Virus record (IMG/VR): IMGVR_UViG_3300047510_001118
Location: 124,001 to 188,000 of that record
DNA length: 64,000 nucleotides
Direction: 5' to 3' (one strand)
Part shown: piece by piece, positions 30,412 through 47,866 of the stretch
Layout of the letters: every line of letters starts with the position of its first letter
How positions within the stretch are numbered: position 1 is the stretch's first letter
The notes under the pieces: generated by a model
Told to the model about the DNA's origin: nothing
Seen by the model: the letters and a program-made list of their open reading frames with translations, nothing else
Database searches by the model: none
Translations under genes and position numbers: made by a program

Positions 30412-30846
30412 ATGAAAGATCAGATTGTCTGCTCCGGCGCACTTTTTTATGCTAAATCTACTAAACGTTTTCTACTGCTACAAAAAGCAGAAGGCAAGCA
30501 TGCCAACACGTGGGGACTAGTAGGCGGTACTAACAACGAAGGCGAAACTGCTTGGCAAGGTCTTCAACGAGAAATCCAAGAAGAAATTGGCGCTGTTCCA
30601 AACATTCTAAAAACTATTCCTATAGAAACATTTGTCAGCAATGATACTGTTTTTAATTTTCACACCTATCTCTGTGTAATTTCAGAAGAATTTATTCCAA
30701 CACTCAGTAATGAACACACGGGCTGGGCCTGGTCAACTGTAGACGGTGCTCCTAAACCTTTACACCAAGGTTTAAAATCTAGTTTCAGTAATAAAACTAT
30801 CAGAACTAAACTTCAAACAGTGTTTGATATTGTAGAGCTAATATAA
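30412..30846 (+). CDS. Nudix hydrolase
   Basis: Complete Nudix box G-TNNEG-E-TAWQGLQ-RE-IQ-EE-IG. Confidence 0.95.
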   Translation: MKDQIVCSGALFYAKSTKRFLLLQKAEGKHANTWGLVGGTNNEGETAWQGLQREIQEEIGAVPNILKTIPIETFVSNDTVFNFHTYLCVISEEFIPTLSNEHTGWAWSTVDGAPKPLHQGLKSSFSNKTIRTKLQTVFDIVELI

Positions 30847-31676
30847 TGTTTAATTGGTTTAAAAAGAAAAAAAGTTGGGTAAGATTCTACTCTCTAGATC
30901 AAAATGTTGCTGTAATGTATCCGGTTATAGAAACTAAACTAGTCGATCGAGACTGGAATGATCTTGCTACCACTGAAAGAAATAGGCCAGAACAAGGACG
31001 ACAGACTGTATTAAATTGTCCAGCAATTAAGCAGGCTATAAATGTCGGTTATGTTCTTTGTGCTCCGGCAGACTTTGTCATCAAGACCGGACCTTCGATT
31101 GAAAATCTAAGTTGGGAAACTCCGTTTTTATTTAAACGCGAATCACAAAAATATACATTCAGCGGCACCGATTATTATGTAAGTTGGCATAGTCCTGCTC
31201 AAACCGAACCGTTGCTACCCAAAGAAATACCTAATTCAGATCGTGCCTGTTTACACTCGGCAGTTAAGGTTGAAACTCCCTGGCGAATAAAGGCCAGCGA
31301 AGATATAGTGTTTTTACAAGTTCCGGTTTCTTATAACAGTGAATCTAGATTTACCGCTGCCATAGGTATAGTCGATCCAAGATACATGCACGCGGTCAGT
31401 GTACAATTATTTTGGCATGTTCTTGATGGAGAAACACTAATCAAAGCAGGCACACCGCTGGTTCAGTACATTCCTATCAGTAGAGAATTATTAAAGAAAA
31501 ACAGTCACGAATTTATCTGTGATTCTGCCACTGACATAGAAAAAGAAATTGAAGAAGCCTATACATTTGCCAATCACAATAGGTTTCCTCGAACTGATAC
31601 TGTATCTAATAAGATTCAAATAATCACAAAATTATTTGATTACTTCCGTAAAAAATACCCAAACTCTAAAATTTAA
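30846..31676 (+). CDS. Conserved hypothetical, possibly dUTPase-like beta fold; paralogue of 45444-46232
   Basis: Shares RFYSL, NCP.I, PADF.I.T, K.ETPWR..AS, Y N.ESRFTAA, VQLFW.VL, AGTPL.Q.IP.SR with the paralogue. Confidence 0.7.
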   Translation: MFNWFKKKKSWVRFYSLDQNVAVMYPVIETKLVDRDWNDLATTERNRPEQGRQTVLNCPAIKQAINVGYVLCAPADFVIKTGPSIENLSWETPFLFKRESQKYTFSGTDYYVSWHSPAQTEPLLPKEIPNSDRACLHSAVKVETPWRIKASEDIVFLQVPVSYNSESRFTAAIGIVDPRYMHAVSVQLFWHVLDGETLIKAGTPLVQYIPISRELLKKNSHEFICDSATDIEKEIEEAYTFANHNRFPRTDTVSNKIQIITKLFDYFRKKYPNSKI

Positions 31677-32263
31677 ATGTTTAACTTAGTTAGAGGATCG
31701 GAATTAATTTCTCCTCGAACAAAAGTATTAAACGACAGAGAGATTCTAGGTATTTCTCCTTCGTAGTAATCAACTAGATGTTCTGTATTACTGGGGAAAA
31801 CTAGCATATCGCCGGCTCTAGGGGTTATGGACCAACTTTTTGAGTTATATACGTTGGCTCCCATAACTTGAAATTCAAGAGTGTCATATTGACTAGTTAT
31901 AAATCTAATATTTCCTGTTTCGCCTTCTGATTCTAGATACAGTACACCAGATAAAATAGAATTAGGGTGCCAGTGTCTATGATGACTCTGTCCTTTTTCA
32001 GTTTTGTTCAACCAACTTTCAGTGATATAAATTTCTACTTTAGGACTAACCATCATTATGTTATAAAAATATTCTTTAACTATCTGTTGGCACTTTTCAC
32101 CGAGGTCTCTAAAGTTTTCAGATCCTAATATATCTTGGCTTTCGCTGATCCAATTTTGATAGTTTCTGGCCCATTTAACTGAGCTCAAATCTATGTTTCC
32201 GATATCAACGGGTGCTCGAAATATTGGTTTTGAAAATAAGGGCCAAACGGTTTTTTCTGTCAT
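31673..32263 (-). CDS. Fe(II)/2OG oxygenase-like (TIGR02466-type, HxH)
   Basis: ESWLN, HWHPNSILSGVLYL, FPS..EH.V, RISLSFN. Start ATG 32263. Confidence 0.85.
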   Translation of the reverse strand: MTEKTVWPLFSKPIFRAPVDIGNIDLSSVKWARNYQNWISESQDILGSENFRDLGEKCQQIVKEYFYNIMMVSPKVEIYITESWLNKTEKGQSHHRHWHPNSILSGVLYLESEGETGNIRFITSQYDTLEFQVMGANVYNSKSWSITPRAGDMLVFPSNTEHLVDYYEGEIPRISLSFNTFVRGEINSDPLTKLNI

Positions 32264-32329
32264 GATGTCTGTTTTCACTTGGTTAACTATGATATATATA
32301 GTGCTTCCCTTGACATTTTACTGACAATT

Positions 32330-32908
32330 ATGAAATTAGAAAAAGACATAGCAATATTTGATAATGTTCTAACCAAAGACGAATGCAGTCAATTAATAGA
32401 ACATTTCAATCGTTTAGAGAAATTAAATCTAAGTTTTACCCGAATAGATCTTAGGGACGCACCTGGACATAAAAAAAATGACCGTGCTACTTTTCCGCTA
32501 GAAGAAACTTCTATGAGATTTTCGTCAGACATGGCCTTTTTAAATGTTTTCTTAGATCGATTTTGGATTTGTTATAATCGGTATATGGATCATTACAGTG
32601 TCTTGATCGACGCACCGAGACAGTATGTTAGATCATTAAAGATACAAAAAACTTTGCCAGGGCAAGGTTATCATGTTTGGCATTTTGAAAATGACGGTAT
32701 TGAACGGGCATCAAGAATCTGTGCTTGGGGAATATATCTTAATACTGTAGAACAAGGTGGAGAAACTGAGTGGCTATACCAGGGCGTAAGAGTTCCAGCC
32801 ACAGAAGGAAGTTTAGTTATATGGCCTGCTGGTTTTACGCACACCCATAGAGGAAATCCTCCACTTAGCGGGGAAAAATATTTAATGACCGGATGGGTAG
32901 AGTTTTAA
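32330..32908 (+). CDS. Fe(II)/2OG oxygenase (prolyl-4-hydroxylase-like, HxE)
   Basis: GYHVWHFE, YLNTVEQGGETE, WPAGFTHTHRGNPP..GEKY..TGW. Start ATG 32330. Confidence 0.88.
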   Translation: MKLEKDIAIFDNVLTKDECSQLIEHFNRLEKLNLSFTRIDLRDAPGHKKNDRATFPLEETSMRFSSDMAFLNVFLDRFWICYNRYMDHYSVLIDAPRQYVRSLKIQKTLPGQGYHVWHFENDGIERASRICAWGIYLNTVEQGGETEWLYQGVRVPATEGSLVIWPAGFTHTHRGNPPLSGEKYLMTGWVEF

Positions 32909-33513
32909 TGGAAGTAATTAATGCTTTTCCTGTCGAATTTTTTGTTTTTAAAAATAAAGATATTGACAATCAGGAATTAATTAAAAAATTAGAACGTCTC
33001 GATAATGTTGAGATTAAAAAAACTACTACTCTTAGTATGTTAGTAGATTTACGTAATTTGCCAGAATTTTCTGATTTATTTTCTTGGTTTAAGTCTTGCC
33101 TTGAAGAAGTACGCCAAGGAATGAAGTTTGACTGCGACCGTTTAGAAATATCAAATAGTTGGTTTAATGTCGCCATGGCAGACTATAAAATGTATCAAAA
33201 CTATCATAGGCATTCTATGAGTTTTTACAGCGCAGTATATTATCTAACTGGCGGGTCATCTACAATATTCGAGGATCCTGTTCGAGATCGAAGCCAAGCA
33301 CAGATTGAAGTTCTTAGACATGACTATCAACCAACATTTGCCTCAGAAGCAGAACCGGGAAAATTAATCATCTTTCCTAGTTGGGTATATCACAATAGTC
33401 GCCCGCATCTAGAAAGTTTCAATCGATATGTAATCAGTTTTAATGTTTTTCCTGCGGGTAAAATTAATTATAATCTAGCCACCGATTCTAAACTTGAGGT
33501 TGAAATAAAATGA
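32908..33513 (+). CDS. Fe(II)/2OG oxygenase-like (TIGR02466-type, HxH)
   Basis: NSWFN, HRHSMSFYSAVYYL, FPSWVYH, RYVISFN. TAATG coupling. Confidence 0.85.
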   Translation: MEVINAFPVEFFVFKNKDIDNQELIKKLERLDNVEIKKTTTLSMLVDLRNLPEFSDLFSWFKSCLEEVRQGMKFDCDRLEISNSWFNVAMADYKMYQNYHRHSMSFYSAVYYLTGGSSTIFEDPVRDRSQAQIEVLRHDYQPTFASEAEPGKLIIFPSWVYHNSRPHLESFNRYVISFNVFPAGKINYNLATDSKLEVEIK

Positions 33514-35003
33514 TTAAAAGTCTAGTAGTTCTTGGCAGCGGCACAAGCGGCCTATTAGCAGCCTTGATGATGAAAAAAGCATTTAATGATATGTCTGTAA
33601 AAGTAGTAGCCAGCGAAAGAATAGGAATTATTGGCGTGGGAGAAGGGGCCACAGAACACTGGAAATTTCTCTGTAATTTTCTTGGCATTAACATGAATGA
33701 AGCAGTAGTTCATTGTGGTGCTACTATGAAAGTTGGTATTGTGTTTAAAGATTGGGGTGTTCCAGATTATTATCATTCGGTATTTGATAGTTACGCTTGG
33801 AAAAATGGTGAAACATATCCCTTTTATTCTAAATTAATGGGAGATCGAGTTGACTCCATACAGTTGACCGGTCGAGGATCTAGAGAGCCCATTGTTCCCC
33901 TTGGTTGGGCTACTATGAAAGAAGACCCCGAGGCTAGTCAGTTTCATTTTAATACATTTAAACTAAATGAATATCTTCACAGACTATGTAAAGAAAGAGG
34001 TATTGAAATAATTAACGACGAGATAACAGACGTAGTTATAGAAGACGGTGTAGTAAAAGAATTAATAGGATCACAAAAACATTCTGCTGATTTCTTCATC
34101 GACAGTAGTGGAATGGCTAGGGTTATCATAGGTAAACTTGGTGCCCAATGGAACAGTTACGGAAAACATTTAATCACTAATTCTGCTATAGCATTTCCCA
34201 CTGAAGATACCGACGAGTATCCAATTTATACCACAGCCACTGCTATGAAGCACGGCTGGATGTGGAACACTCCAGTCCAAGGACGATGGGGTAACGGTTA
34301 TGTATTCTGTGACAAGTATATTGACTTTGATCAGGCACAGGCCGAGGTAGAAGAAAAACTAGGTAAAAAAGTTAATATATTTAAAAAAATAAAGTTTGAT
34401 CCAGGGACACTTGATAAAAATTGGATCAGTAATTGTTGTGCTATAGGTCTTAGTTCTGGGTTTGTTGAGCCTTTAGAAAGTTCAGCAATAAGTCAAGGAC
34501 TATTACAAACATGGTTATTAATGAATGTATTTCCGTCTTGGGGGAATTCTAAAAAATCTATTACAGATCTCTATAATAGCAAGTGTCGAGCAATCAGCGA
34601 AAACATTTTAGATTTTATAGCAGTTCACTTTATTACTCCTAGGGAAGATACAGAGTTTTGGAAATATTTAAAATTAAATAGATCTAAGTGGGTTCCTAAG
34701 TCTTTAGAAAAAAATCTAAAGAGTTGGCATAAACGAACACCGCTGTCGTTTGAGTTTGACAGTCAATGGACGTTATTTAAAGCAGAAAATTGGATTTTAA
34801 CTTTGTACGGTTTAGGTCTGTTTGATCTAGATGCTATCAAAGAAGAATACGAACTACACGACCAATCAGTTAAAGATTACGTCAACGGATATTTACAAGA
34901 CGAAATAGATTTTATAAACTCTCGAACTTATGTTTCCCATAAAAAAGGTTTAGAGATGTTTGTTGAAAATTTTAATAAAATAAAAACGGAATATAAATTA
35001 TGA
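33510..35003 (+). CDS. Flavin-dependent halogenase family (PrnA/RebH-like) #1
   Basis: GSGTSG, GVGEG, ATMK (catalytic Lys position), WMWNTP, FVEPLESS. Confidence 0.9.
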   Translation: MIKSLVVLGSGTSGLLAALMMKKAFNDMSVKVVASERIGIIGVGEGATEHWKFLCNFLGINMNEAVVHCGATMKVGIVFKDWGVPDYYHSVFDSYAWKNGETYPFYSKLMGDRVDSIQLTGRGSREPIVPLGWATMKEDPEASQFHFNTFKLNEYLHRLCKERGIEIINDEITDVVIEDGVVKELIGSQKHSADFFIDSSGMARVIIGKLGAQWNSYGKHLITNSAIAFPTEDTDEYPIYTTATAMKHGWMWNTPVQGRWGNGYVFCDKYIDFDQAQAEVEEKLGKKVNIFKKIKFDPGTLDKNWISNCCAIGLSSGFVEPLESSAISQGLLQTWLLMNVFPSWGNSKKSITDLYNSKCRAISENILDFIAVHFITPREDTEFWKYLKLNRSKWVPKSLEKNLKSWHKRTPLSFEFDSQWTLFKAENWILTLYGLGLFDLDAIKEEYELHDQSVKDYVNGYLQDEIDFINSRTYVSHKKGLEMFVENFNKIKTEYKL

Positions 35004-36502
35004 TCGATTCTTTGTGTGTATTAGGTGGAGGAACTAGCGGGCTAATAGTTGCGCTTATGGCTCGAGAAGCCTATCCTAAACTAAAAATAACTATGTTAGA
35101 ATCTAGCAAGTTAGGAATTATTGGTGTTGGCGAAGGATCTACAGAACACTGGAAAAAATTTATCAATCAGATTGGAATAAATGTCCCCGAACTAGTTAGG
35201 GAAACCGGCGCAACATTTAAAATAGGTATTAAGTTTACAAACTGGCATGGAGACGGAACGCACTACTTCCATAGCCTCAGTGAACAGTTCGGCAGTCATT
35301 CTTTTAAAAACGGATTACCATTTACATGGTTTCAAATCGTAGGGGAAAATTGGGATCCGCTAGATACTGCTTGGAAATTATCAATGGACAGCCGTCATAT
35401 TGAACCTCTTCATGATATCCTAAGTCAATATCATTTTGACACATTTAAACTTAACGACTACTTACACAGGCTCTGTAAAATTAGAGGTATTGATATTGTT
35501 GACACTGAGGTCGAGGACGTCATTTTAGATGAACAGGGATTTGTTAAAGAATTAATTGATGTAAACCATACTAGACATGCCTATGATTTTTATGTCGACT
35601 GTAGCGGATTCCGACGTGTCATTGGCAGCAAACTAGGCGCAAAGTGGATTGATTGTACAGATAAACTGCCAATGAATTCGGCTATTGCTTTCCCTACAGG
35701 GTATACCGAAGATATTCCTAGTTATACTGAAGCAACAGCATTAACCAGCGGCTGGTGCTGGAGGATTCCAACACAAGAGAGATACGGAAACGGTTATGTT
35801 TTCTGTGATAATTTTATCAATGAAACACAGGCCTATGATGAAGTTTCAGAATATTATAAACAGTCAAACATCGCAGACAAAATAGAAATAGGAAGAAAAG
35901 TTAAATTTGGAGCAGGTTATGTTGACAAATTCTGGATTAAAAATTGTGCGATGATAGGTCTCAGTGGCATATTTGTAGAACCTCTCGAGGCTTCTAGTAT
36001 CGGCACTACTATACAGCAGACATTTATGCTATTGCCAAGTTTAATGTTCTTTAATCGCGACGAAGAAATAACATCTAACAAGTATAATTTTATGATGAAA
36101 AAAGTTTCCACTAACATCGTAGACTTTATACAACTTCACTATTTTACTCAAAGGTCTGATTCAGAATTTTGGCGTTGGTGTAAAAACGAACTAGTATTAA
36201 CTGATTTTAACAAAGAATACCTAGACTATTTTAAAAAGAATATGCCTAATGTATATTATTTTAATGATCCAATGATTCTGTTTAGTCATTTAAATTTTAC
36301 TCAGGTTATGCATGGTCTAAGATTATTCGACAACGATAAAATATTAAAAACTTATGAAAGTCATCTAAGTCAGTATACACTTGAAACCAATAATATTTTA
36401 AAAGATATTGACGATCAAGTAGCAAATAATGAAATATTTTCTCATCGCCAGGCTTTAGAAATTTTAAAAGAAAGATATGAAAAAACACACTATAAACTCT
36501 AA
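35000..36502 (+). CDS. Flavin-dependent halogenase family #2
   Basis: GGGTSG, GVGEG, ATFK, WCWRIP, FVEPLEAS. Confidence 0.9.
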   Translation: MIDSLCVLGGGTSGLIVALMAREAYPKLKITMLESSKLGIIGVGEGSTEHWKKFINQIGINVPELVRETGATFKIGIKFTNWHGDGTHYFHSLSEQFGSHSFKNGLPFTWFQIVGENWDPLDTAWKLSMDSRHIEPLHDILSQYHFDTFKLNDYLHRLCKIRGIDIVDTEVEDVILDEQGFVKELIDVNHTRHAYDFYVDCSGFRRVIGSKLGAKWIDCTDKLPMNSAIAFPTGYTEDIPSYTEATALTSGWCWRIPTQERYGNGYVFCDNFINETQAYDEVSEYYKQSNIADKIEIGRKVKFGAGYVDKFWIKNCAMIGLSGIFVEPLEASSIGTTIQQTFMLLPSLMFFNRDEEITSNKYNFMMKKVSTNIVDFIQLHYFTQRSDSEFWRWCKNELVLTDFNKEYLDYFKKNMPNVYYFNDPMILFSHLNFTQVMHGLRLFDNDKILKTYESHLSQYTLETNNILKDIDDQVANNEIFSHRQALEILKERYEKTHYKL

Positions 36503-38027
36503 GGCAATAATTTTAGGTGGTGGTACTGCTGGTTGGCTAACAGCAATTTTCATAAAGCGTAACTGGCCCACTGTAGATGTTTCTGTTATAGAAAATCCCA
36601 AACAACCTCCCATAATTGCTGGAGAAAGTGGCACAACAACATTCGTAAGTCTTCTGCGTCATTTAAAAATTGATGTTGAAGATTTTATTAGGAAAGTCAA
36701 TGCTACTCCTAAATTGGGAGGTAAATTTCGTAACTGGGACAGTGTTGGTTCTGAATTTATTCATAGTTTACAGACAGATTATGCTCCGTGGCTAGACGGA
36801 TGGAACGAATACGTTGATGAAAATACTGAAGTTAATTACAGTCTGACAGCAGTTCGAGGAATGTTAGGACATCAAAGTGATCCGTATCTTAAAACTCTCA
36901 TAGGAAATAATGTTCCTATTGCCGATGCGTTATTCGCAACATATTTTATTAAAGAAAATAAAGTTCCTTTTGGGGCGTCTAGTGATATTCCTTGTATTCC
37001 AATGTGGCATTTTGAAAGTCGAGGAGCCGCGGGTTATTTTAAAAATCTCGGGTTAGAGAGAGGTATAAATCTAATCGAAGGCGAATATCAAAGTTCTAAT
37101 TTAGATGACCGAGGAAATATAACATCGCTGGTTCTTGATGGTGATAGACTAGTTCAAGGAGACTGGTTTTTCGATTGTTCGGGATTCGCTAGACTATTAG
37201 TAGGCAAAGTTTACAATGAAAAGTTAGTTGACTATACAAATTACTTTCCAGCAAGAGCGGTAGTAGCATGGTGGGACGATCCTTGTTATTGTGTCACTAC
37301 TAATGCTACAGCAATGAAATATGGTTGGTCTTGGAATATTAATCTTCGCCATAGATCTGGAAACGGTTATATCTATGACCCGGATCATATAACTCTAGAT
37401 CAAGCACTAGACGAAGCCAAAGAAATGTTTGGCCAGCATATCGAACCCATTGCTAATTTTCAATTCACTCCAGGAATGTTTAGAAAGGCATGGCATAAAA
37501 ATACAGTTGCTATCGGACTTAGTTCTGGCTTTCTAGAACCTTTAGAAGCCAACGGCGTAGCAGTAATTATTGAAAGTTTATATGCTTTACAAGATTATTG
37601 GAAACCTTTTGAAAAATCAATGCGGGAAGAAGCGATAGAAAGATTTAATGATCGTGTCTGGTACATAACAGAAGATATTCGAGACTTTTTATCTCTACAT
37701 TATAGAGGTCATAGATCTGACACAAAATTTTGGCTCAGTCATAAAAATGATGATTTTCGAGTGCCCCCAAGTCTAAAAGAAAAACTAGAAAACTGGAAAT
37801 TATTTTTTGCTAATATGGGGTCGGATCCCGAATGTCACGGATATAGCCCTACGGCGTGGCTTATGGTTTTACAGGGATTAAAAATGTTTGATCATAGTCC
37901 GATAGCGGCTAGCATGAAGAACTTTCTTCCTATAGGAAATAGTGTACTAAATAAGAATGTAGCCCGTTATAAGGGACTTGTTGCTCCATTTTGGACCATA
38001 GATGAGTGGATTCAACGGACAGCATAA
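36477..38027 (+). CDS. Flavin-dependent halogenase family #3
   Basis: GGGTAG, IAGES, ATPK, WSWNIN, FLEPLEAN. Confidence 0.88.
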   Translation: MKKHTINSKAIILGGGTAGWLTAIFIKRNWPTVDVSVIENPKQPPIIAGESGTTTFVSLLRHLKIDVEDFIRKVNATPKLGGKFRNWDSVGSEFIHSLQTDYAPWLDGWNEYVDENTEVNYSLTAVRGMLGHQSDPYLKTLIGNNVPIADALFATYFIKENKVPFGASSDIPCIPMWHFESRGAAGYFKNLGLERGINLIEGEYQSSNLDDRGNITSLVLDGDRLVQGDWFFDCSGFARLLVGKVYNEKLVDYTNYFPARAVVAWWDDPCYCVTTNATAMKYGWSWNINLRHRSGNGYIYDPDHITLDQALDEAKEMFGQHIEPIANFQFTPGMFRKAWHKNTVAIGLSSGFLEPLEANGVAVIIESLYALQDYWKPFEKSMREEAIERFNDRVWYITEDIRDFLSLHYRGHRSDTKFWLSHKNDDFRVPPSLKEKLENWKLFFANMGSDPECHGYSPTAWLMVLQGLKMFDHSPIAASMKNFLPIGNSVLNKNVARYKGLVAPFWTIDEWIQRTA

Positions 38028-38052
38028 ATATACTGTTAAAGGAGAATTTACA

Positions 38053-38223
38053 ATGCCTACATATAAGATGATTTTTAGAGATGCAGAAAATCCTAATACA
38101 TCTGACCTACATATCATTGAAGATTTTTGCGAAGCAAAAACTAGAGAAGAAGCACGTCAAATTTTTGAGGATCGCCACGGAGTGAAGTATGTAGTCGCCG
38201 GTCCGATCAAAGTTGAGGAATAA
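38053..38223 (+). CDS. Small hypothetical protein (56 aa)
   Basis: TAAATA at 38025-38030, AAGGAG SD at 38039-38044, ATG 38053. Confidence 0.8.
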   Translation: MPTYKMIFRDAENPNTSDLHIIEDFCEAKTREEARQIFEDRHGVKYVVAGPIKVEE

Positions 38224-38240
38224 TCCTTAATTTTTCTTGT

Positions 38241-41244: not shown

Positions 41245-41948
41245 ACTGCCCTCGCAAAAAATACCTGTGTAAGTCTAGCCGTAGTATGTGAATTTCCAAA
41301 GAAGTTTTCGGCACTGTGCCAGTTGCGAGGATCGAAAATAATACATCTATTATAAACGCTTTCCATCGTAACTGAAGGTGTAAAGTGAGAAATTTGTTCT
41401 TTTCTATATTTTTCGTACTGTGCTCGTTCCTCGGGACTGGCTACTAAAACATCATTCATAAAAATTTCTGTGTAAAGATCTCCGTTAAAATCGGTTTGAT
41501 CTTCGTAGATGACAGTGCCACTGCCCAGCGGGCTGTCTTGATTTAAATAGACAACACCTGCGATATTTAATTTAGGATCGTCATCGTGGACCCATCCGCG
41601 TCCATAGGATTCCTCGATAACTTGAAATCCGGTTTGTAGTTCTAAAAATTCTGTATATCCGTAGTCTTTGAGTATTATCAGTAGTTTCCTCATAAACATT
41701 TCAAAGAAATCTCGATTTACAGTATGTAACAAATCAGTTCTAAGTCCGGGCCAACTGCCGCGTTCTCCTTTAAAAAATTTCTGATCCAGAGCAAATTCTC
41801 TAACTAGATCCGGGTCTTCGTAAAAGTTATCAAAGACCATCGTGGGCAAGTATGGATAGACAAAACGATTCTTAATGCCCGATCCTTCGATGAATCTGCC
41901 ACTACTTTTATTCATTTCGATCAGTTTATTAATGTATGCCTTATCCAT
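41241..41948 (-). CDS. Fe(II)/2OG oxygenase (HxD)
   Basis: FDNFYE, WPGLRT, GWVHDD, AGVVYL, YNRC, WHSAE, RLTQVFF. Confidence 0.83.
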   Translation of the reverse strand: MDKAYINKLIEMNKSSGRFIEGSGIKNRFVYPYLPTMVFDNFYEDPDLVREFALDQKFFKGERGSWPGLRTDLLHTVNRDFFEMFMRKLLIILKDYGYTEFLELQTGFQVIEESYGRGWVHDDDPKLNIAGVVYLNQDSPLGSGTVIYEDQTDFNGDLYTEIFMNDVLVASPEERAQYEKYRKEQISHFTPSVTMESVYNRCIIFDPRNWHSAENFFGNSHTTARLTQVFFARAV

Positions 41949-42519
41949 TTTTTCTCGCCGTAAAATTCATTGTTAGGACTATTCTTTTTGTAAACATTTT
42001 AGGACACGAACTTGCGTGATAATGCCAGCCGTTAAACATTAAGATTTTTCCTTGATCGGGTGTACTACGATGCATTACTCTATACTTTTCAGACGGATCG
42101 ATTTCATGGAATATATAGGTATCTCCGTCGGTGCTGTTAACATAGTAACAAACAGTAAAGTGTTCTTGATCATAATCTCGATGAGGAAGATTATGTTTAT
42201 ATGGCATGCTTGGTAGAGCATATTTGGTATTTAATAAAAATCCCAACCGCATTCTTAGCAACGTACCTAACTCATATCCTGTTTTATTCAGCGTTTCATT
42301 TAATAATGGCATGAAAAAATCTAAGTACGGATTAGTTTCATTGTTGGGATGGAACACTAAATGTGTAAATCCTGGTGTAGAATTTTGTATATCGTTGGCT
42401 TTTTCAAACGTAGTATCTTCAACAAAGTGCCAAGGAAATTTAATATCTGTTACTAGGTCATAAATTTTATTTTGATATTCTTTATCTATAACATTTGATA
42501 TTTCTATAGGTTTAAACAT
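41941..42519 (-). CDS. Fe(II)/2OG oxygenase (HxD); paralogue of 39412-40020
   Basis: RMRLG, PHRD, YYVNSTDGDT, FNGWHYHASS, RIVLTMN. Confidence 0.85.
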   Translation of the reverse strand: MFKPIEISNVIDKEYQNKIYDLVTDIKFPWHFVEDTTFEKANDIQNSTPGFTHLVFHPNNETNPYLDFFMPLLNETLNKTGYELGTLLRMRLGFLLNTKYALPSMPYKHNLPHRDYDQEHFTVCYYVNSTDGDTYIFHEIDPSEKYRVMHRSTPDQGKILMFNGWHYHASSCPKMFTKRIVLTMNFTARKNG

Positions 42520-43234
42520 TGTGATTGATCCTATAATAATTTCTATCTACGCTGTTCGTAGGCGACTCTGTGGTAAATCTATTCCAACACGGAATACTCA
42601 TACTTAATCTTTTACTATCTGGATACGCAACGTGAAAACATCTAGCAGGAATATACAGCGCATCGCCTGGTTCTAGTTCTACGTCTAATGCTACTTCTAA
42701 ATCTTCTTCAGAGACTCTGTTATTCATAGTTCCAGTTTTATAAAGATAAGATATTCTATTTTTAAATACCTTCCATCTAGTTTTTCCTTCTACTTGGAAA
42801 ATAAAATTTGCTGGATAATCATCGTGTATTGGAAAACTTTTTGATCCAGTTAATCCGCAGTAAACATGAATAGCGGCATTAACAAAAAATAATTTTTCAA
42901 AAATAGTTAGCAAGTGATTTGTTTTTTCGTTGTAAAAACCATAATTAGTAATTACTAAACAGTTACCTTGATTTACCTTGTCAAAAATAAATTCTTTATC
43001 TTGTACTTTCCTGTTCCATATCCATGCTTTAGTATGCTCTGGTATTTCAATTTTTTGATTTGTTATATGATCTATTAATTCAAATTGAAATAATTCAGGG
43101 CGATTCATACAAGACTCTACATCTTGCCATGTAAGCAATTCATGAGGAGTTTCTAATAAACCTTTAAAAAAATGAGGCTTATCGTTGACTAAGAGATTAG
43201 TTTCATTTAATATACGTTGTCCGATAGCGTTCAT
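42512..43234 (-). CDS. JmjC/cupin oxygenase (YcfD/ROX-like core)
   Basis: SFPIHDD..NFIFQVEGK.RW, LEPGDALYIP...FHVA, RLSMSI. Confidence 0.88.
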   Translation of the reverse strand: MNAIGQRILNETNLLVNDKPHFFKGLLETPHELLTWQDVESCMNRPELFQFELIDHITNQKIEIPEHTKAWIWNRKVQDKEFIFDKVNQGNCLVITNYGFYNEKTNHLLTIFEKLFFVNAAIHVYCGLTGSKSFPIHDDYPANFIFQVEGKTRWKVFKNRISYLYKTGTMNNRVSEEDLEVALDVELEPGDALYIPARCFHVAYPDSKRLSMSIPCWNRFTTESPTNSVDRNYYRINHNV

Positions 43235-43829
43235 CGTCTGTCCTAATTAATTTAACATTAAATGCTAGAGAAATTCGATCCTCGTTAGTTGGATTGTATC
43301 CTACACCATGCGGCAAATGTCCTGGGAACATTAATAACTTACCTGATAAAGGTTCAAAACTTATTGCGCTGGCACTGGCCGGTGTATAATGATCTAAAAC
43401 TGCCTGTGAAGATATAATATAATCTAAAGCATGATTTTTATAAAATGTTATATTTCCTTGCCCGGCAGTTGCTTTGACATAAAATGTTCCTGATAAAAAA
43501 CTATTATCGTGTATATGGATCGAATTTCCGTTATTTTGATTATTGATATTAAACCAAAAATTTTCTAAATCAATAATAACTAAATCTTCTTTGTAGCCGT
43601 AATCTCTTACACATTGCTCTGCTTGTTCTAATATTTTACGTTCTAAAACTTCTAATTCTTTATATGTACCCGGACGAAAATCTTTACTTTGCCATCCGCC
43701 TTCGTTGCTTAGTTTTCTTCCCTGTGGATCTTTTTCTCTTAGAGAATAGCACAGGGATATCAAATCTGTAGGATCGATATCAGTTTGTTCCCACCAAATA
43801 GGAGTTGGAAAATAATATCCTATATTCAT
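43203..43829 (-). CDS. Fe(II)/2OG oxygenase-like (TIGR02466-type, HxH)
   Basis: NEGGWQS, WFNIN, HIHDNSFLSGTFYV, FPGHLPHGV, RISLAFN. Confidence 0.88.
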   Translation of the reverse strand: MNIGYYFPTPIWWEQTDIDPTDLISLCYSLREKDPQGRKLSNEGGWQSKDFRPGTYKELEVLERKILEQAEQCVRDYGYKEDLVIIDLENFWFNINNQNNGNSIHIHDNSFLSGTFYVKATAGQGNITFYKNHALDYIISSQAVLDHYTPASASAISFEPLSGKLLMFPGHLPHGVGYNPTNEDRISLAFNVKLIRTDDERYRTTYIK

Positions 43830-44623
43830 TTTAATATATCTCTCATAGTTGTAGGAGGTAATTCGTGACTAAAAGCAAATGTATGACTCCATCTAAAGTC
43901 TACTGAATCGCAGATGTAGGCCAAATGACATACATTGGCTGGATAAATTGTAAGAGTTTTATATTTGGACGGTGCTGTTCCTATTAGCTCAAATCCCCAT
44001 TCAGACAATTCGCCGTCGGAGATATTAAACCAACTATCGGCTCTTTTAGGAAACTCGCTAAGTTCTCTCCACTTTTTGTGATTTGGATGTGTTTTGTCAA
44101 CTTGAAAATCATATAATTCTCTAAACATCTTTCCGTGATATTGATAAATCTTTGTTCCGCTGTCGTTAAGGTTATGATCAGTAAACCACATATTTGCTAC
44201 CATTCCATAAACATAGTCAATGTGAGGTATTCTCCAACAGGTTATTGGTCGAGAATTTTTCTTGAAATAAACATTTCCCCACTCGTGTATCTGTGGATCA
44301 AATATGTCAGTTCTGATATTTTTTAAATAAAATTCTTTTATTAAGACACAGAGATCTAAACTTACCCACTCGGGTACATGTATTGTATCGAAAGGATTTG
44401 GATCAAAGTTACTAGGATGATTATTATCTTTTTGTATTGGAAATGATGCTATAAGATTTTTGAAAATTTCAAATCCATCATCTACAAACGGATCTTCTGC
44501 TATCCAGTAACCAACATCTTTGGTTAGTTTGACATATTCTGTCTGCCAGGAGTCCAGAGGTTTTAATTTTAAAACCTTGTTAAAATTATTAGCATCAGGA
44601 TAGCATACTTTAAAATCTATCAT
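43826..44623 (-). CDS. Fe(II)/2OG oxygenase-like (HxD)
   Basis: IPHID, NMWF, SGT.IY, YPANVCH, RWS..F. Confidence 0.7.
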   Translation of the reverse strand: MIDFKVCYPDANNFNKVLKLKPLDSWQTEYVKLTKDVGYWIAEDPFVDDGFEIFKNLIASFPIQKDNNHPSNFDPNPFDTIHVPEWVSLDLCVLIKEFYLKNIRTDIFDPQIHEWGNVYFKKNSRPITCWRIPHIDYVYGMVANMWFTDHNLNDSGTKIYQYHGKMFRELYDFQVDKTHPNHKKWRELSEFPKRADSWFNISDGELSEWGFELIGTAPSKYKTLTIYPANVCHLAYICDSVDFRWSHTFAFSHELPPTTMRDILK

Positions 44624-45204
44624 TTTATATTAAATGTGAGAACGATTCTTTCTTGATCGGTTTTATTTGGCTGGACTCTGTGACGCAAAAATCCAGGAAA
44701 TATTAATACGTCATTGGTTTCAGCAGGAACTGCTCTGTAAAGCGATTCTTCTGGTATTATAGGATACATTGTTTTATGATATTCAAGAGGATCTTTAAAT
44801 TCAATATATCCGGCACCCGGCGGAAGTTTTATATAGGCAGCGACAGCAAATGTAACATTGTTGTGATTGTGCTCTAAAGTTTCTCCAGAGTTTCCGTGTC
44901 TATTAAACCACGACTCTGTTACTTCACTCCACCCGTTAGTGAATCCGTATTCTCGACGAATATGTGCGATGCGTTCGCCTAGCCAATTTTGAAAATGTGC
45001 TAGTTCGTCCCAGGTGTGTGGTTGTATTTCCTTGTCAAGCGATACTGTAGATATCGCCTGTCCTTTTTCTAATCGAGAATTTTCTTCAACTTGAGAAAAC
45101 AAATTCTCAATTTTAGGGCCTAAAATGTCATAATTAAATTCGTACCTAAATTTCCAAATGTCTGGAGGAAATACGAACAAACCGCCATTATTAAGATGTA
45201 ACAC
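44620..45204 (-). CDS. Fe(II)/2OG oxygenase-like (TIGR02466-type, HxH)
   Basis: ESWFN, EHNH, FPGFLRHRV, RIVLTFN. GTG start at 45204 with GAGGA SD. Confidence 0.85.
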   Translation of the reverse strand: MLHLNNGGLFVFPPDIWKFRYEFNYDILGPKIENLFSQVEENSRLEKGQAISTVSLDKEIQPHTWDELAHFQNWLGERIAHIRREYGFTNGWSEVTESWFNRHGNSGETLEHNHNNVTFAVAAYIKLPPGAGYIEFKDPLEYHKTMYPIIPEESLYRAVPAETNDVLIFPGFLRHRVQPNKTDQERIVLTFNIK

Positions 45205-45439
45205 CCTGTGTTTCCTCGAACGTCTCAAGTGCTAGAGTAAGACCCATGAGAACACCTTCCATCTTTAAAACATCGACAGATAAATCTTGTCGACGAGTAA
45301 AATCAATAGAAGTAATTCCATATGGATTTAATTTAATGTTAGCAAAATCTTCTTCCATTTTTGATAATTCTTGTTGTGCTTTTTCTTTTTCAGAAGTTAG
45401 ATTAGCCATCGTCTGTTGAATTTTTTCTTTGAAACTCAT
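45191..45439 (-). CDS. Small coiled-coil hypothetical protein (82 aa)
   Basis: Heptad-like helix, AAGGA SD, inside the operon. Confidence 0.8.
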   Translation of the reverse strand: MSFKEKIQQTMANLTSEKEKAQQELSKMEEDFANIKLNPYGITSIDFTRRQDLSVDVLKMEGVLMGLTLALETFEETQGVTS

Positions 45440-45443
45440 AATA

Positions 45444-46232
45444 TCATCCTTTTTTATATCTAGTTAGTACTGCTATAGAACGTTTTAATCTTGAGGCTAA
45501 ACTATCATGATTTAAAATCACACAGTTTGCGGCATAATTAAAGGCTCTTTCCTTTTCTTTATCACGGTCATTGGCGTTTTCTATTTTAACATCATAACTG
45601 GATAAGGACAAGGATTTTCTTGAAACAGGTATTAATTGGCATAGAGGAGTTCCAGCTCGAACTAGAGTTTTGTCATTTAATACATTCCAAAAAAGTTGGA
45701 CATTTAATACGTGTCCGTATTTCATATCAAGGAACCCCGTGGCTGCTGTGAATCTGCTTTCGTTGTTATAGGTTACAGGCAGTTGAAGTAGCATAACATC
45801 ATCACTGGCTTCAACTCGCCACGGGGTTTCTAACTTTATTACAGTTTTTAAAGTTGTATTGGGATCATCTATCAGCGGTTCTACTTGACTACGTGTATGA
45901 CCAGAAACATAGGCATCACGTCCTTCGCTGACTTTATTGAATCGATAAGGTTCTCTCCATTCCATGCTTACACCGTCACCGTTAGTTTGAATGATGAAAT
46001 CGGCAGGTGCTGGCACTACCCAGCCTGTTGAAATAATTTTTCTAATTCCTGGACAATTTTTAGAACTCAAAGTTTCAGGAAGGTCACCGACCTGTTCCTG
46101 TTCCATAAACGGTCTAACTAACCTTGATGATGGAATAATTGGAAAAAGATCTACTACACCAGGCTCTAGACTATAAAATCTGATATAGGGCTCTTCTTTT
46201 TTACCAAATAATCTTTTACAGAGCGTAGTCAT
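45444..46232 (-). CDS. Conserved hypothetical; paralogue of 30846-31676
   Basis: See the shared motif blocks listed for the paralogue. Confidence 0.75.
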   Translation of the reverse strand: MTTLCKRLFGKKEEPYIRFYSLEPGVVDLFPIIPSSRLVRPFMEQEQVGDLPETLSSKNCPGIRKIISTGWVVPAPADFIIQTNGDGVSMEWREPYRFNKVSEGRDAYVSGHTRSQVEPLIDDPNTTLKTVIKLETPWRVEASDDVMLLQLPVTYNNESRFTAATGFLDMKYGHVLNVQLFWNVLNDKTLVRAGTPLCQLIPVSRKSLSLSSYDVKIENANDRDKEKERAFNYAANCVILNHDSLASRLKRSIAVLTRYKKG

Positions 46233-47832
46233 CTTTTCCGCCGTAGATATTATCTTTCAAATATTGATAATGCGTCGGTAGTGTTTTAATATACTCAACA
46301 ACAAAATCTCTATATTCTTCGTATCTACGTTTTGTAAATCCTATTTCTTCTTCTTTAAGTTCGCGTTCGATTCTATCACCGCCGAAGAAAATTAATTCTT
46401 TGGTCGATATTGATTTAACTCCCATGCCGGCTGCAATGAAAATATTTCCAGTATAGTCTTGAAAGTATCTTTGGTTACCGGCTATGTTGCCGACCAAATT
46501 CGGGTACTGTGCTTGATACAACATATAATCACCGTGCATATCAGGACAATATTCGTGTAGTTCAGTACACCAGCGCCAGTAAGGAGTGTCAGTCCTCATC
46601 GACAGAGCATAGTGTTGAGAAACAAAATCTCTAAACTTAGTAACTTCAAAATCTACAGCAAAATTATAGCCTTCAATTTCTGATCTAGTAACAAAGCCCT
46701 GTCTACGGTTAAGAGCATCGACTAGTTTAATAATGTTTTCGTGAGTAGTTAACAGTCCAGTAGACTCTAATGGTTCAACAAATCCATAACTTAGGCCGAC
46801 ACCAACTACATTGGCTAACCATGCTCTTCGACGCTTACCATGTCTAATTTTTACAGGAAACATTTCTGCTTCTTCTGCGATTTTAGGACTGTGTTTTACA
46901 GCCAAATGTGCTCTAAATTCTTTTTGAGCATCCTCGGGTGTTACAAATCTAGTAGAAAATACGTAGCCAGTGCCAATCCTGTTCCAGAGAGGAATATTCC
47001 ATACCCAGCCATTGTCCAAGGCGTGGCAGTCAGTGACATTGTGCATTTCGCGCTCTCTGTCGATGTATGGTAATCTACAGGCCCAAGCCATATCATTGGC
47101 TAGATATTTGTCAAATGGTTTAAATTCAGAACCCATCCAACCTTCTAATAAAATTGATTTGAACCCAGTACAATCGATCCATAGATCCGATTTTAAAATT
47201 CTACCATCATCTAACATGATATCTGTGATATCGCCTCTTGTATTTTTTTTATGCGAATGTACATCGCCTACTATATGTTCAACTCCGTGGGGTAGTGCTA
47301 TTTTTTCTTTGAGATATTTTCCAAAAAGTTGAGCATCAAGATGATATGCTGTATCCCATTTAAATTTATAATTTCTTAGTATACCTTTTTCGTCTTTGGT
47401 TTCTTTATTGTGTTTTGCTAACAGCGTATTTCCTGTAACAAAGAATTCTGCAAAACTTTCTGGCGGATATTCGTCAGGATATAATGTTGATAATTCGCTC
47501 CATGATTGTAGGCCGCCCGGCTTATCAGTATAATCTAACCCAGCACTAAATGGGTATTCAAAAGATTCCCCCTTGCCTTCTCTAAAATTAGTAAAACGAA
47601 TAGAATTTTTATATGTGGCATTACAAGCGGCCATCCAGTCTTCGTCTTTAAGATCTAATAACTGAAGAAATTTATTAATGTGACCTAAGGTGCTTTCACC
47701 AACTCCGACAGTGCCAACTTTGGAAGATTCGACAAGTGTAATCTTTAAATGTGGACACAGTTTAGATAATGCTGCCGCAGTCATCCAACCAGAACTTCCA
47801 CCACCTACTATTGTGACTGTGTTAATCTGCAT
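46216..47832 (-). CDS. Flavin-dependent halogenase family #4
   Basis: GGGSSG, GVGEST, ATYK, YHLDA, WVWNIP, FVEPLESTG. Confidence 0.92.
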   Translation of the reverse strand: MQINTVTIVGGGSSGWMTAAALSKLCPHLKITLVESSKVGTVGVGESTLGHINKFLQLLDLKDEDWMAACNATYKNSIRFTNFREGKGESFEYPFSAGLDYTDKPGGLQSWSELSTLYPDEYPPESFAEFFVTGNTLLAKHNKETKDEKGILRNYKFKWDTAYHLDAQLFGKYLKEKIALPHGVEHIVGDVHSHKKNTRGDITDIMLDDGRILKSDLWIDCTGFKSILLEGWMGSEFKPFDKYLANDMAWACRLPYIDREREMHNVTDCHALDNGWVWNIPLWNRIGTGYVFSTRFVTPEDAQKEFRAHLAVKHSPKIAEEAEMFPVKIRHGKRRRAWLANVVGVGLSYGFVEPLESTGLLTTHENIIKLVDALNRRQGFVTRSEIEGYNFAVDFEVTKFRDFVSQHYALSMRTDTPYWRWCTELHEYCPDMHGDYMLYQAQYPNLVGNIAGNQRYFQDYTGNIFIAAGMGVKSISTKELIFFGGDRIERELKEEEIGFTKRRYEEYRDFVVEYIKTLPTHYQYLKDNIYGGKDDYAL

Positions 47833-47858
47833 ATTCTTTCCTTTATAACAACGCTGAT

Positions 47859-47866
47859 TATTTATA
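47859..47866 (-). promoter_or_regulatory. T4-type late promoter TATAAATA heading the right arm of the enzyme island
   Basis: Exact TATAAATA just downstream of a terminator and upstream of an AAGGA SD. Confidence 0.65.

What the first reader, a model, noticed from the sequence alone, without database searches (positions are those of the whole stretch)
30412..47866. 17-kb halogenase and oxygenase tailoring island embedded in, and apparently co-regulated with, virion genes
Seen: between gp15 and the fibre operon sit a Nudix hydrolase, 4 flavin-dependent halogenase homologues, 14 Fe(II)/2OG or JmjC oxygenases, 2 unknown paralogues and 2 small ORFs. They form two converging, translationally coupled arms meeting at 38223/38241. 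The left arm continues the gp14-gp15 transcript with TAAGTA-N5-ATG at Nudix; the right arm starts at TATAAATA 47866-47859. There are no NRPS/PKS, transporter or flavin reductase genes. Established: multi-copy 2OG oxygenases and Trp-halogenase-like genes occur in aquatic T4-like phages with mostly unknown substrates, and JmjC/ROX and P4H-type enzymes hydroxylate proteins. Inference: this may be a late-expressed post-translational modification system that hydroxylates or halogenates fibre proteins. Alternatives are modification of nucleotides or packaged DNA (Nudix nearby) or of host small molecules.
Basis: partly seen in the sequence, partly recalled or inferred. Interest (0 to 1): 0.82.

Follow-up and report, generated by a model that had tools for sequence, protein, structure and literature searches.

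The report
Phage halogenase and oxygenase gene cassette
A freshwater giant phage carries an enlarged copy of an enzyme cassette already described in the marine cyanophage Syn9 (halogenases plus many oxygenases). The cassette has late-type promoter signals and is always inherited with a set of tail-fibre-tip genes, but what it modifies is still unknown.

Summary
Between gp15 and the fibre operon lie a Nudix gene, 4 flavin-dependent halogenases, 14 dioxygenase-type genes, 2 paralogues and 2 small ORFs. All are intact and tightly packed. One oxygenase (31673-32263) lies on the opposite strand, so the left arm is not one co-directional unit.

The region is not a novel island. The right arm matches Syn9 gp40-gp54 and S-CREM1_68-80 gene for gene, a cassette described by Iyer et al. 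2010. Its halogenase is the orthologue of VirX1, the Syn10 iodinase. The "unknown paralogues" have a dUTPase fold and are DUF6065-like. Nudix is a backbone gene, also found next to gp15 in PA5oct.

About 120 IMG/VR loci keep the same gene order. The right arm has a conserved terminator followed by a NATAAATA late-type promoter, the motif also found upstream of virion genes. In cultured phages, the VirX1-type halogenase is always adjacent to a gp40-like gene and lies in the same block as Gly/His-rich fibre-tip genes.

My best guess is a late-acting system that modifies the co-inherited fibre-tip proteins (confidence about 0.35). Small-molecule and nucleotide substrates remain possible. No expression or chemical data exist.

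The parts
27379..27386 (+). GATAAATA late-promoter-like motif just before the likely true start (ATG 27388/27394) of the gp14-like gene. Probable start of the gp14-like, gp15, Nudix, paralogue A transcript.
   Evidence: motif enrichment
28965..30398 (+). gp15-type tail sheath stabiliser (477 aa), a backbone virion gene.
   Evidence: Pfam T4-gp15_tss E 1e-22; 33-35% identity to the PA5oct/Atu_ph07 group
30412..30846 (+). Nudix hydrolase. A backbone gene rather than a cassette member.
   Evidence: Pfam NUDIX E 8e-16; 40% identical to the PA5oct Nudix, which also follows gp15
30846..31676 (+). Paralogue A: dUTPase-fold, DUF6065-like protein (276 aa).
   Evidence: 37% identical to paralogue B; phrog_7084; conserved position
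31673..32263 (-). Oxy_5-type dioxygenase g03 on the minus strand, convergent with paralogue A.
   Evidence: Pfam 2OG-FeII_Oxy_5 E 6e-21; HxH...H...R invariant; strand conserved in relatives
32291..32302 (.). Conserved GATATATAT(A/T)AGT element in the divergent g03/g04 gap. A candidate non-late, possibly bidirectional, promoter.
   Evidence: Conserved in divergent relatives; the exact 9-mer is unique in the window
32330..32908 (+). P4H-type dioxygenase g04 (2OG-FeII_Oxy_3; HxE...H...K).
32893..33513 (+). Oxy_5 dioxygenase g05.
33510..38027 (+). Three tandem flavin-dependent halogenases: g06 (33510-35003), g07 (35000-36502), g08 (36477-38027).
   Evidence: Pfam Trp_halogenase E 1e-88 to 5e-95; GxGxxG, catalytic Lys, WxWxIP-like and EPLE motifs present; closest bacterial relatives lie in TonB-receptor loci
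38002..38223 (+). Small conserved ORF g09 (73 aa), unknown function.
   Evidence: Conserved position in relatives; no family hit
38238..38272 (+). 15-bp hairpin followed by a T-run where the two arms meet. Terminator-like for the + strand.
38241..45228 (-). Eleven tandem dioxygenase-type genes: g10 38241-38864; g11 38861-39415; g12 39412-40020; g13 40013-40636; g14 40633-41244 and g15 41241-41948 (DUF6445); g16 41941-42519; g17 42512-43234 (JmjC, ROX-like); g18 43203-43829 (TIGR02466); g19 43826-44623; g20 44620-45228.
   Evidence: Pfam/NCBIfam; conserved HxD/H...H...R/K in each family; profile links; g17 nearest NO66/YcfD/MINA53; orthologous to Syn9 gp45-gp54
45191..45439 (-). Small helical ORF g21 (82 aa), the Syn9 gp44 orthologue.
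   Evidence: Conserved position in all loci; no family hit
45444..46232 (-). Paralogue B: dUTPase-fold, DUF6065-like protein (Syn9 gp43 orthologue), start overlapping the halogenase stop.
   Evidence: AF2 pLDDT 83; Foldseek matches to dUTPases, TM 0.6-0.7; Atlas DUF6065; adjacent to the halogenase in 14 of 16 phage records
46216..47832 (-). VirX1-type flavin-dependent halogenase g23 (538 aa).
   Evidence: PDB 6QGM VirX1 E 1e-197; 55% identity to Syn9/Syn10, 64% to S-CREM1; Lys75 invariant in 76 orthologues
47859..47866 (-). TATAAATA late-type promoter element 27 nt before the halogenase ATG.
   Evidence: N/CTAAATA conserved 36-52 nt before the ATG in the large majority of jumbo-lineage relatives
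47889..47914 (-). Intrinsic terminator (7-bp GC-rich stem, 6-nt loop, T6) ending the fibre operon.
   Evidence: hairpin conserved with different but complementary stems in relatives
47938..48429 (-). gp40-like protein (163 aa, 5.5% Trp) with TATAAATA 5 nt upstream. Always directly upstream of the first VirX1-type halogenase. Possible fibre chaperone or substrate.
48453..51891 (-). Four paralogous fibre-tip-like proteins. Three are Gly-rich (22-26% Gly) and His-rich (about 5%).
   Evidence: Pfam Gly_rich_2; composition; 65-68% identity to Syn9 gp38 and S-CREM1_67
52242..61949 (-). 3225-aa fibre gene with a NATAAATA motif (61942-61949) 22 nt upstream.

Best explanation
This is an enlarged, two-armed copy of the cyanophage dioxygenase-halogenase cassette first described in Syn9 (gp40-gp54). 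It sits in the virion-gene region of a freshwater jumbo phage.

Shown:
- All four halogenases keep the FAD motif, the catalytic lysine and the EPLE glutamate.
- All 14 dioxygenase-type proteins keep a metal triad plus a basic residue at the position where such enzymes bind 2-oxoglutarate.
- One halogenase is the orthologue of the iodinase VirX1.
- Each arm carries a dUTPase-fold, DUF6065-like partner.
- The right arm begins at its own conserved T4-late-type promoter, directly after the terminator of the fibre operon.

Inferred:
- The cassette encodes no scaffold-building or export function, so it must act on something that already exists in the infected cell.
- The halogenases would use host-reduced FADH2, O2 and halide to halogenate electron-rich aromatic rings.
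- The dioxygenases would use Fe(II), 2-oxoglutarate and O2 to hydroxylate C-H bonds.
- The VirX1-type halogenase is always adjacent to a Trp-rich gp40-like gene and in the same block as Gly/His-rich fibre-tip genes, and it carries the same promoter type as virion genes. The most likely substrates are therefore those co-inherited fibre-tip module proteins, modified late in infection before or during assembly.
For: - Gene-for-gene synteny with Syn9 gp40-54 and S-CREM1_68-80.
- VirX1 orthology.
- Catalytic residues conserved across 13-76 orthologues per family.
- Conserved terminator plus NATAAATA before the halogenase.
- 6 of 11 NATAAATA hits fall in the 2.8% intergenic DNA (8 of 11 after correcting the start of the gp14-like gene). 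All lie upstream of genes, mostly virion genes.
- The gp40-like gene occurs in 20 phage records. All 20 carry a VirX1-type halogenase (at least 40% identity) directly downstream. None of the other roughly 43 halogenase-bearing records has it.
- The Gly/His-rich tip gene occurs in 19 of the same records.
- The same block order holds in about 80 IMG/VR loci and in two unrelated phage backbones.
- The JmjC member is nearest to the protein hydroxylases NO66, YcfD and MINA53.
- VirX1 has an unusually open active site and no known native substrate (PMC8407142).
- No NRPS, PKS or transporter genes were seen in any locus.
Against: - There are no expression, proteomic or chemical data. No RNA run was listed.
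- Eighteen enzymes is a large number for decorating a few proteins.
- The fibre-tip proteins are poor in Trp (0.4-1.1%).
- Co-inheritance could simply reflect co-transfer with a mobile fibre module.
- Distant members of the dUTPase-fold partner family sit in replication and nucleotide modules.
- Bacterial relatives of the halogenases and Oxy_5 enzymes lie in TonB-receptor/glycoside-hydrolase loci, which points to imported small molecules or glycans (PMC2938197).
- The left arm has a different, non-late promoter-like element.
Confidence: 0.35

Rival explanations
1. Small-molecule tailoring (the Iyer et al. 2010 proposal). The halogenases and dioxygenases successively modify a host-derived amino acid, peptide, glycan or other metabolite into an organohalogen or hydroxylated product that benefits the phage or host.
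For: - Published analogy with multi-dioxygenase antibiotic pathways, and with bacterial neighbourhoods that combine Trp halogenases, JmjC, gp52-like dioxygenases and TonB receptors (PMC2938197).
- Bacterial relatives of g07 lie next to TonB receptors and glycoside hydrolases.
- VirX1 halogenates many small aromatics in vitro.
- A different cyanophage cluster (S-SSM6a) is predicted to make a halogenated metabolite (PMC7824862).
Against: - No scaffold-forming, ligase, carrier or export gene in the window or in about 120 related loci.
- A late promoter means expression shortly before lysis.
- Strict adjacency to gp40-like and fibre-tip genes is not explained.
Confidence: 0.25
2. Nucleotide or nucleic-acid modification. 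The dUTPase-fold, DUF6065-like proteins bind a pyrimidine (deoxy)nucleotide or DNA base, which the halogenases and dioxygenases halogenate or hydroxylate. This would give modified phage DNA or RNA.
For: - dUTPase fold with retained motif I-like and motif III-like signatures.
- Distant homologues (hhalign 99.5%) lie beside a clamp loader, a Mom-like protein and dCMP deaminase, or beside dUTPase, an IMPDH-like gene and adenylosuccinate synthetase.
- Paralogue A is translationally coupled to Nudix.
- Atlas clusters show DUF6065 fused to 2OG or JmjC oxygenases.
- Some phage DNA-modifying genes, such as Mu mom, are expressed late (own knowledge).
Against: - The motif V P-loop and the motif IV arginine of true dUTPases are missing, and there is no sequence-level match to dUTPase.
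- Nudix is a backbone gene, present next to gp15 in PA5oct without the cassette.
- Pool-level base replacement needs early, not late, expression.
- No flavin-dependent halogenase is known to act on nucleotides (own knowledge).
- Fourteen different dioxygenases is hard to rationalise for base modification.
Confidence: 0.12
3. Metabolic modulation. The many 2OG-dependent enzymes mainly consume or sense 2-oxoglutarate to manipulate host nitrogen-stress signalling (Sullivan et al. 2010), or they act in DNA repair (Weigele et al. 2007).
For: Published hypotheses for cyanophage 2OG oxygenases (PMC3037559).
Against: - It does not explain at least five divergent dioxygenase families kept in fixed order with halogenases over long evolutionary distances.
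- It does not explain the late-type promoter or the linkage to fibre-tip genes.
- No member reaches the threshold for AlkB-like families.
Confidence: 0.05

Closest known systems
Syn9 gp40-gp54 dioxygenase/halogenase cassette (Iyer, Abhiman, de Souza, Aravind 2010, NAR; also S-CREM1_68-80)
   Same: The gene order matches: gp40-like, VirX1-type halogenase, dUTPase-fold protein, small ORF, then about 10 divergent dioxygenases including one MINA/NO66-like JmjC. The cassette lies directly downstream of fibre genes. Orthologues are 33-64% identical.
   Different: - The host backbone is a PA5oct/Atu_ph07-like jumbo phage, not Kyanoviridae.
- The cassette has its own terminator and late promoter, whereas Syn9 has a 32-nt gap.
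- There is an extra convergent arm with 3 halogenases of another subfamily, a second dUTPase-fold gene and 3 more dioxygenases, giving 4 + 14 enzymes against 2 + 10.
VirX1, flavin-dependent iodinase of cyanophage Syn10 (PDB 6QGM)
   Same: g23 aligns over its full length (E 1e-197, about 55% identity). It keeps GxGxxG, the catalytic Lys, WxWxIP and EPLE.
   Different: Activity and halide preference are untested here. The other three halogenases are only 25-28% identical to g23 and group with bacterial TonB-locus enzymes.
Bacterial TonB-receptor / 'tryptophan halogenase' / SapC / cupin (JmjC) / gp52-like dioxygenase neighbourhoods
   Same: Both have multiple tandem halogenase paralogues, Oxy_5 or DUF6445 dioxygenases, and an accessory gene of about 250 aa directly after a halogenase (PMC2938197).
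   Different: The phage has no receptor, transporter or glycoside hydrolase. SapC shows no detectable similarity to the phage dUTPase-fold protein. The function of the bacterial module is also unknown.
Ribosomal oxygenases (NO66, MINA53, YcfD/RoxA)
   Same: g17 matches their JmjC catalytic core and has a conserved HxD...H.
   Different: g17 has only 240 aa. It aligns only to the JmjC core of proteins that are about 370-490 aa long, so it probably lacks their other domains. Similarity is modest (E 2e-8). The substrate is unknown.
Trimeric dUTPases / dCTP deaminases
   Same: Same fold (Foldseek TM 0.6-0.7). A motif III-like G-x-[LI]-D-x-x-Y-G-H hairpin and an A-x-D motif I-like strand are present.
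   Different: Identity is about 12% and there is no HMM-level match. Motif V is absent and a helical C-terminal extension is present. An invariant Cys-Pro-Gly is not found in dUTPases.

Membership tests
Syn9-type cyanophage dioxygenase-halogenase cassette | Tandem array of about 10 divergent 2OG/JmjC dioxygenases with Trp-halogenase-type genes and a dUTPase-fold gene | tested here: met
Syn9-type cyanophage dioxygenase-halogenase cassette | Orthology and shared gene order with Syn9 gp40-gp54 | tested here: met
   A phmmer best-hit map gives the same order in L002 (Syn9), L001 (S-CREM1) and the window. Identities are 33-64%.
Flavin-dependent (Trp-type) halogenase | GxGxxG FAD motif, catalytic Lys (PrnA K79 equivalent), WxWxIP, conserved Glu | tested here: met
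   All are present in g06, g07, g08 and g23. WxWxIP is degenerate in g06 (WMWNTP) and g08 (WSWNIN). Lys is invariant in every complete orthologue.
Flavin-dependent (Trp-type) halogenase | Halogenating activity and a partner flavin reductase | not testable with these tools
   No flavin reductase domain in the island. Only the VirX1 orthologue has published in vitro activity.
Fe(II)/2-oxoglutarate dioxygenase (DSBH) | HxD/E...H metal triad and a basic 2OG-binding residue after the distal His | tested here: met
   HxD/E...H...R/K in g04, g10, g12, g14-g17 and g19. HxH...H...R in g03, g05, g11, g13, g18 and g20. The HxH variant is typical of the PF13759/TIGR02466 group seen here.
Fe(II)/2-oxoglutarate dioxygenase (DSBH) | Significant profile match to a DSBH family for each of the 14 genes | tested here: inconclusive
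   Met for 12 genes. g10 and g19 have only sub-threshold hits (2OG-FeII_Oxy_2 at E 0.12; DUF6445 at E 0.12). Their assignment rests on the motif pattern and on Iyer et al. 2010.
JmjC ribosomal oxygenase (ROX) | JmjC core plus dimerisation and winged-helix domains; a ribosomal protein substrate | tested here: not met
   The JmjC core is met. g17 has 240 aa and aligns only to the core of chains that are 373-489 aa long. The substrate is untestable.
dUTPase | Five conserved motifs including the C-terminal P-loop-like motif V; HMM match | tested here: not met
   Only the fold is shared. There is no PDB or Pfam sequence match. Motif V is absent and motif IV has Pro where dUTPases have Arg.
DUF6065 (PF19541) | Pfam model match above threshold | tested here: inconclusive
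   The window proteins give no hit. 3 of 33 family members hit at E of 0.007 or weaker. Atlas clusters list DUF6065 in 17-30% of members.
T4-type late promoter | TATAAATA-like element upstream of late (virion) genes, enriched in intergenic DNA and conserved in relatives | tested here: met
T4-type late promoter | Late transcription start mapped at the element; gp55/gp33-type factors | not testable with these tools
   No RNA run was listed. The factors are not in the window.
RiPP / NRPS / PKS biosynthetic gene cluster | Precursor peptide or assembly-line synthetase plus an exporter | tested here: not met
   No such domains were found. The small ORFs g09 and g21 lack Trp and are poor in aromatic residues.

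The most novel reading that the evidence does not exclude
The dUTPase-fold, DUF6065-like proteins deliver a pyrimidine nucleotide or a DNA/RNA base to the halogenases and dioxygenases. In that case these phages would enzymatically halogenate or hydroxylate nucleic acid, a modification chemistry not known in any virus. A less radical version is equally new in kind: the Trp-rich gp40-like protein or the Gly/His-rich fibre tips are enzymatically halogenated virion proteins.
Probability: 0.12. Interest if true: 0.92.

Novelty: new member of a known kind. Interest (0 to 1): 0.5.

Why it matters
The native substrate of VirX1, and the role of the multi-copy 2OG oxygenases that are abundant in aquatic phages, have been open questions since 2007-2010.

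This locus and its roughly 120 relatives add three things:
- The cassette is a stable module that spans two phage families.
- In the jumbo lineage it has its own late-type promoter.
- Its VirX1-type halogenase is inseparable from a gp40-like gene and from Gly/His-rich fibre-tip genes.

These points turn a vague 'auxiliary metabolic gene' label into specific experiments that can be done in cultured phages (Syn9, Syn10, S-CREM1). If the substrate proves to be a virion protein or a nucleic acid, it would be the first enzymatic halogenation of a viral macromolecule.

Tried and rejected
- Single-sequence AlphaFold of paralogue B failed (pLDDT 32). A 33-sequence alignment gave pLDDT 83.
- A profile of the paralogue family against PDB sequences gave no hit even at E 10. 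Only fold comparison shows the dUTPase relation.
- The PA5oct gene after its Nudix is not homologous to paralogue A.
- SapC, which follows halogenases in bacterial loci, shows no similarity to the paralogue family. Nor does the TPR-Oxy_5 fusion.
- A scan of 185,579 bacterial and archaeal genomes found only two relatives of the paralogue, both on MAG contigs that may be phage DNA (not checked). The scan relies on two conserved peptide patterns.
- Sequencing runs: only four DNA metagenome runs hold the locus, and no RNA run was listed. Read laying was therefore not used and expression timing is not measured.
- The Syn9 transcriptome paper (Doron 2016) and the VirX1 paper were not held in the library.
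- Rfam and tRNA scans of the window were empty.
- The generic sigma-70 and terminator scan was at chance level.
- I considered the gp40-like protein as a dedicated halogenase substrate because it is 5.5% Trp with six invariant Trp. Conserved Trp is common, and Atlas leads point weakly to tail-fibre assembly chaperones, so it stays a hypothesis.
- No broken or read-through genes were seen in the region.

Full report
**What is there**

The window is the virion-gene region of a large phage. It encodes a tail sheath (15758-19060), tail tube, large terminase, UvsX, a gp15-type sheath stabiliser (28965-30398) and a 3225-aa fibre. The same DNA occurs on a 278-kb IMG/VR contig and on a Logan contig of up to 381 kb, from freshwater metagenomes. 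gp15 is closest (33-35%) to the jumbo phages PA5oct and Atu_ph07, not to cyanomyoviruses.

All are intact, with 1-38-nt overlaps.

**Corrections to the observation**

- The Oxy_5 gene at 31673-32263 is on the minus strand and convergent with paralogue A. The left arm is therefore interrupted. This inversion is conserved in relatives.
- The gap before the next + strand gene carries a conserved GATATATAT(A/T)AGT element. The exact 9-mer is unique in the window and is not of the late type.
- The Nudix gene is 40% identical to the PA5oct Nudix, which also follows gp15 in a phage without the cassette. It belongs to the backbone.
- The gp14-like gene probably starts at ATG 27388/27394, directly after a GATAAATA motif. 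A late transcript covering gp14-like, gp15, Nudix and paralogue A is therefore plausible. Whether it continues into the halogenases is open.

**It is a known cassette**

The 538-aa halogenase matches VirX1, the Syn10 iodinase (PDB 6QGM), at E 1e-197. It is 55-64% identical to the Syn9, Syn10 and S-CREM1 genes.

The downstream paralogue B matches Syn9 gp43 (53%) and lies next to the halogenase in 14 of 16 phage records. A best-hit map shows the same order in Syn9, S-CREM1 and the window: Gly-rich genes, gp40-like, halogenase(s), gp43-like, gp44-like, then about ten dioxygenases including a JmjC.

Iyer et al. [quoted passage not shown] They proposed secondary-metabolite synthesis.

My AlphaFold model of paralogue B (pLDDT 83) confirms the dUTPase fold. 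The Atlas places it near DUF6065, which also occurs fused to 2OG and JmjC oxygenases.

**Enzymes look active**

Orthologue alignments from the related loci show an invariant catalytic Lys, GxGxxG, WxWxIP-like and EPLE motifs in the halogenases. Every dioxygenase family keeps an HxD/E...H or HxH...H triad plus Arg/Lys.

The fourteen dioxygenases fall into at least five divergent groups and are not recent duplicates. Two of them (g10, g19) lack a significant family match. The JmjC is nearest to NO66, YcfD and MINA53 but only over the catalytic core. The PHROG/RefSeq names 'ferrochelatase', 'endonuclease V' and 'minor coat protein' for these genes look like mis-annotations.

**Conservation**

- About 80 IMG/VR loci were found through paralogue B, and about 40 through paralogue A.
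- They keep nearly the same order from the big fibre gene through both arms, at 50-80% protein identity.
- Variation is small: g13 or g04/g05 are absent in subclades, and there are extra halogenase copies.
- A minimal version consists of a halogenase, one Oxy_5 gene and two dUTPase-fold genes beside Nudix-gp15 (L128, L129).

**Regulation**

In the jumbo lineage the gap between gp40-like and the halogenase always has a hairpin-plus-T-run terminator. The stem sequence differs between loci but stays complementary. In the large majority of these loci an N/CTAAATA element lies 36-52 nt before the ATG, followed by an AAGGA-type RBS. In Kyanoviridae the gap is only 32-56 nt and has neither feature.

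In the window, 6 of 11 NATAAATA hits fall in the 2.8% intergenic DNA (8 of 11 after correcting the start of the gp14-like gene). All are upstream of genes, including the 3225-aa fibre. This supports a shared late-type promoter class. It is sequence inference only, because no RNA run was listed.

**Co-variation with fibre genes**

| Gene (tblastn against 50,697 phage records) | Records with a hit |
|---|---|
| gp40-like | 20 |
| Gly/His-rich tip gene | 19 of the same 20 |
| VirX1-type halogenase (at least 40% identity) | 22 |
| Any halogenase homologue | 65 |
| JmjC | 27 (19 of them among the 20 gp40-like records) |
| Oxy_5 enzymes | 123 |

All 20 gp40-like records carry a VirX1-type halogenase directly downstream. 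None of the roughly 43 records with other halogenases has a gp40-like gene. The records span about ten cyanomyovirus species of several genera, plus the unrelated jumbo lineage.

The tips are 22-26% Gly and about 5% His, against 0.3-0.9% His in other fibres. The gp40-like protein is 4-5% Trp. It may be a fibre chaperone, but that lead is weak.

**Evidence pointing elsewhere**

- Distant but clear homologues of the dUTPase-fold protein (hhalign 99.5%) lie in replication and nucleotide modules. Examples are a clamp loader, Mom-like protein and dCMP deaminase; or dUTPase, an IMPDH-like gene and adenylosuccinate synthetase. Others lie directly after Oxy_5 genes.
- Bacterial relatives of the left-arm halogenases lie beside TonB receptors and glycoside hydrolases. 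Some are four in tandem, some sit with SapC, and some with a TPR-Oxy_5 fusion.
- SapC is not detectably related to the phage protein.

**Verdict**

This is a real, conserved cassette of a kind already described, here in enlarged two-armed form in a new phage lineage. The substrate is unknown.

| Hypothesis | Confidence |
|---|---|
| Late modification of the co-inherited fibre-tip module proteins | about 0.35 |
| Small-molecule or glycan tailoring | about 0.25 |
| Nucleotide or nucleic-acid modification | about 0.12 |
| 2OG or N-stress modulation, or DNA repair | about 0.05 |

The remainder is unassigned.

Noticed in passing
window 48435-48442 (-), 19169-19176 (+), 27379-27386 (+): NATAAATA lies only 1-6 nt before the start codons of the gp40-like gene, the 19181 gene and the gp14-like gene. 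With T4 late-promoter geometry, transcription would start at or next to the AUG, which suggests leaderless late mRNAs. Other copies (47859, 61942, 15746) lie 20-27 nt upstream and have an RBS.
   Followed up: partly
window 27337-27387: This divergent gap between the 1465-aa gene (minus strand, ATG 27336) and the gp14-like gene carries NATAAATA on both strands (27367-27374 minus, 27379-27386 plus). The TTG 27325 start given by the ORF listing for the gp14-like gene is probably wrong.
   Followed up: partly
window 32291-32302; L084-L121: A GATATATAT(A/T)AGT element is conserved in the divergent gap between the inverted Oxy_5 gene and the next + strand gene. The exact 9-mer is unique in the window. 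It could be a bidirectional promoter of another temporal class.
   Followed up: partly
window 48453-51045: Three paralogous fibre-tip-like proteins have 22-26% Gly and about 5% His, with HxH-type runs near the C-terminus. They are 65-68% identical to Syn9 gp38 and S-CREM1_67, which is more conserved than the enzymes. The fourth paralogue (51064-51891) is not His-rich.
   Followed up: partly
L002 (Syn9 RefSeq), L001; window g10, g12, g16, g15, g19: The database names 'ferrochelatase', 'DNA endonuclease V', 'minor coat protein' and 'stress response protein yorD' on orthologues of these dioxygenase-like and gp40-like genes look like propagated mis-annotations.
   Followed up: partly
L133 7001-7783; L136 7001-7741; L141 1772-2512: Distant homologues of the dUTPase-fold paralogue sit in three kinds of neighbourhood. 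One is between a clamp loader and a Mom-like gene near dCMP deaminase. One is in a block with dCMP deaminase, dUTPase, an IMPDH-like gene and a 331-aa adenylosuccinate synthetase. One is directly after a 2OG-FeII_Oxy_5 gene.
   Followed up: partly
L145, L146, L147, L148 (bacterial plasmids): Bacterial 'tryptophan halogenase family' genes 30-33% identical to g07 lie in TonB-receptor/glycoside-hydrolase loci. Examples are four in tandem in Niveispirillum, one followed by SapC in Pseudoalteromonas, and one preceded by a TPR-Oxy_5 fusion in Catenovulum.
   Followed up: partly
L128, L129: A minimal version of the module (one halogenase, one Oxy_5 gene, two dUTPase-fold genes) lies convergent with Nudix-gp15-gp14 in a more distant phage lineage.
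   Followed up: no
window 44620-45228: The only start codon ORF listing offers for dioxygenase g20 is a TTG that overlaps the small ORF g21 by 38 nt. The true start is uncertain.
   Followed up: no
window 28000-48000 vs 48000-56000: G+C is 33-38% across gp15 and the cassette but 43-47% in the adjacent fibre genes. The Gly-rich coding (GGN codons) may account for part of this difference.
   Followed up: no
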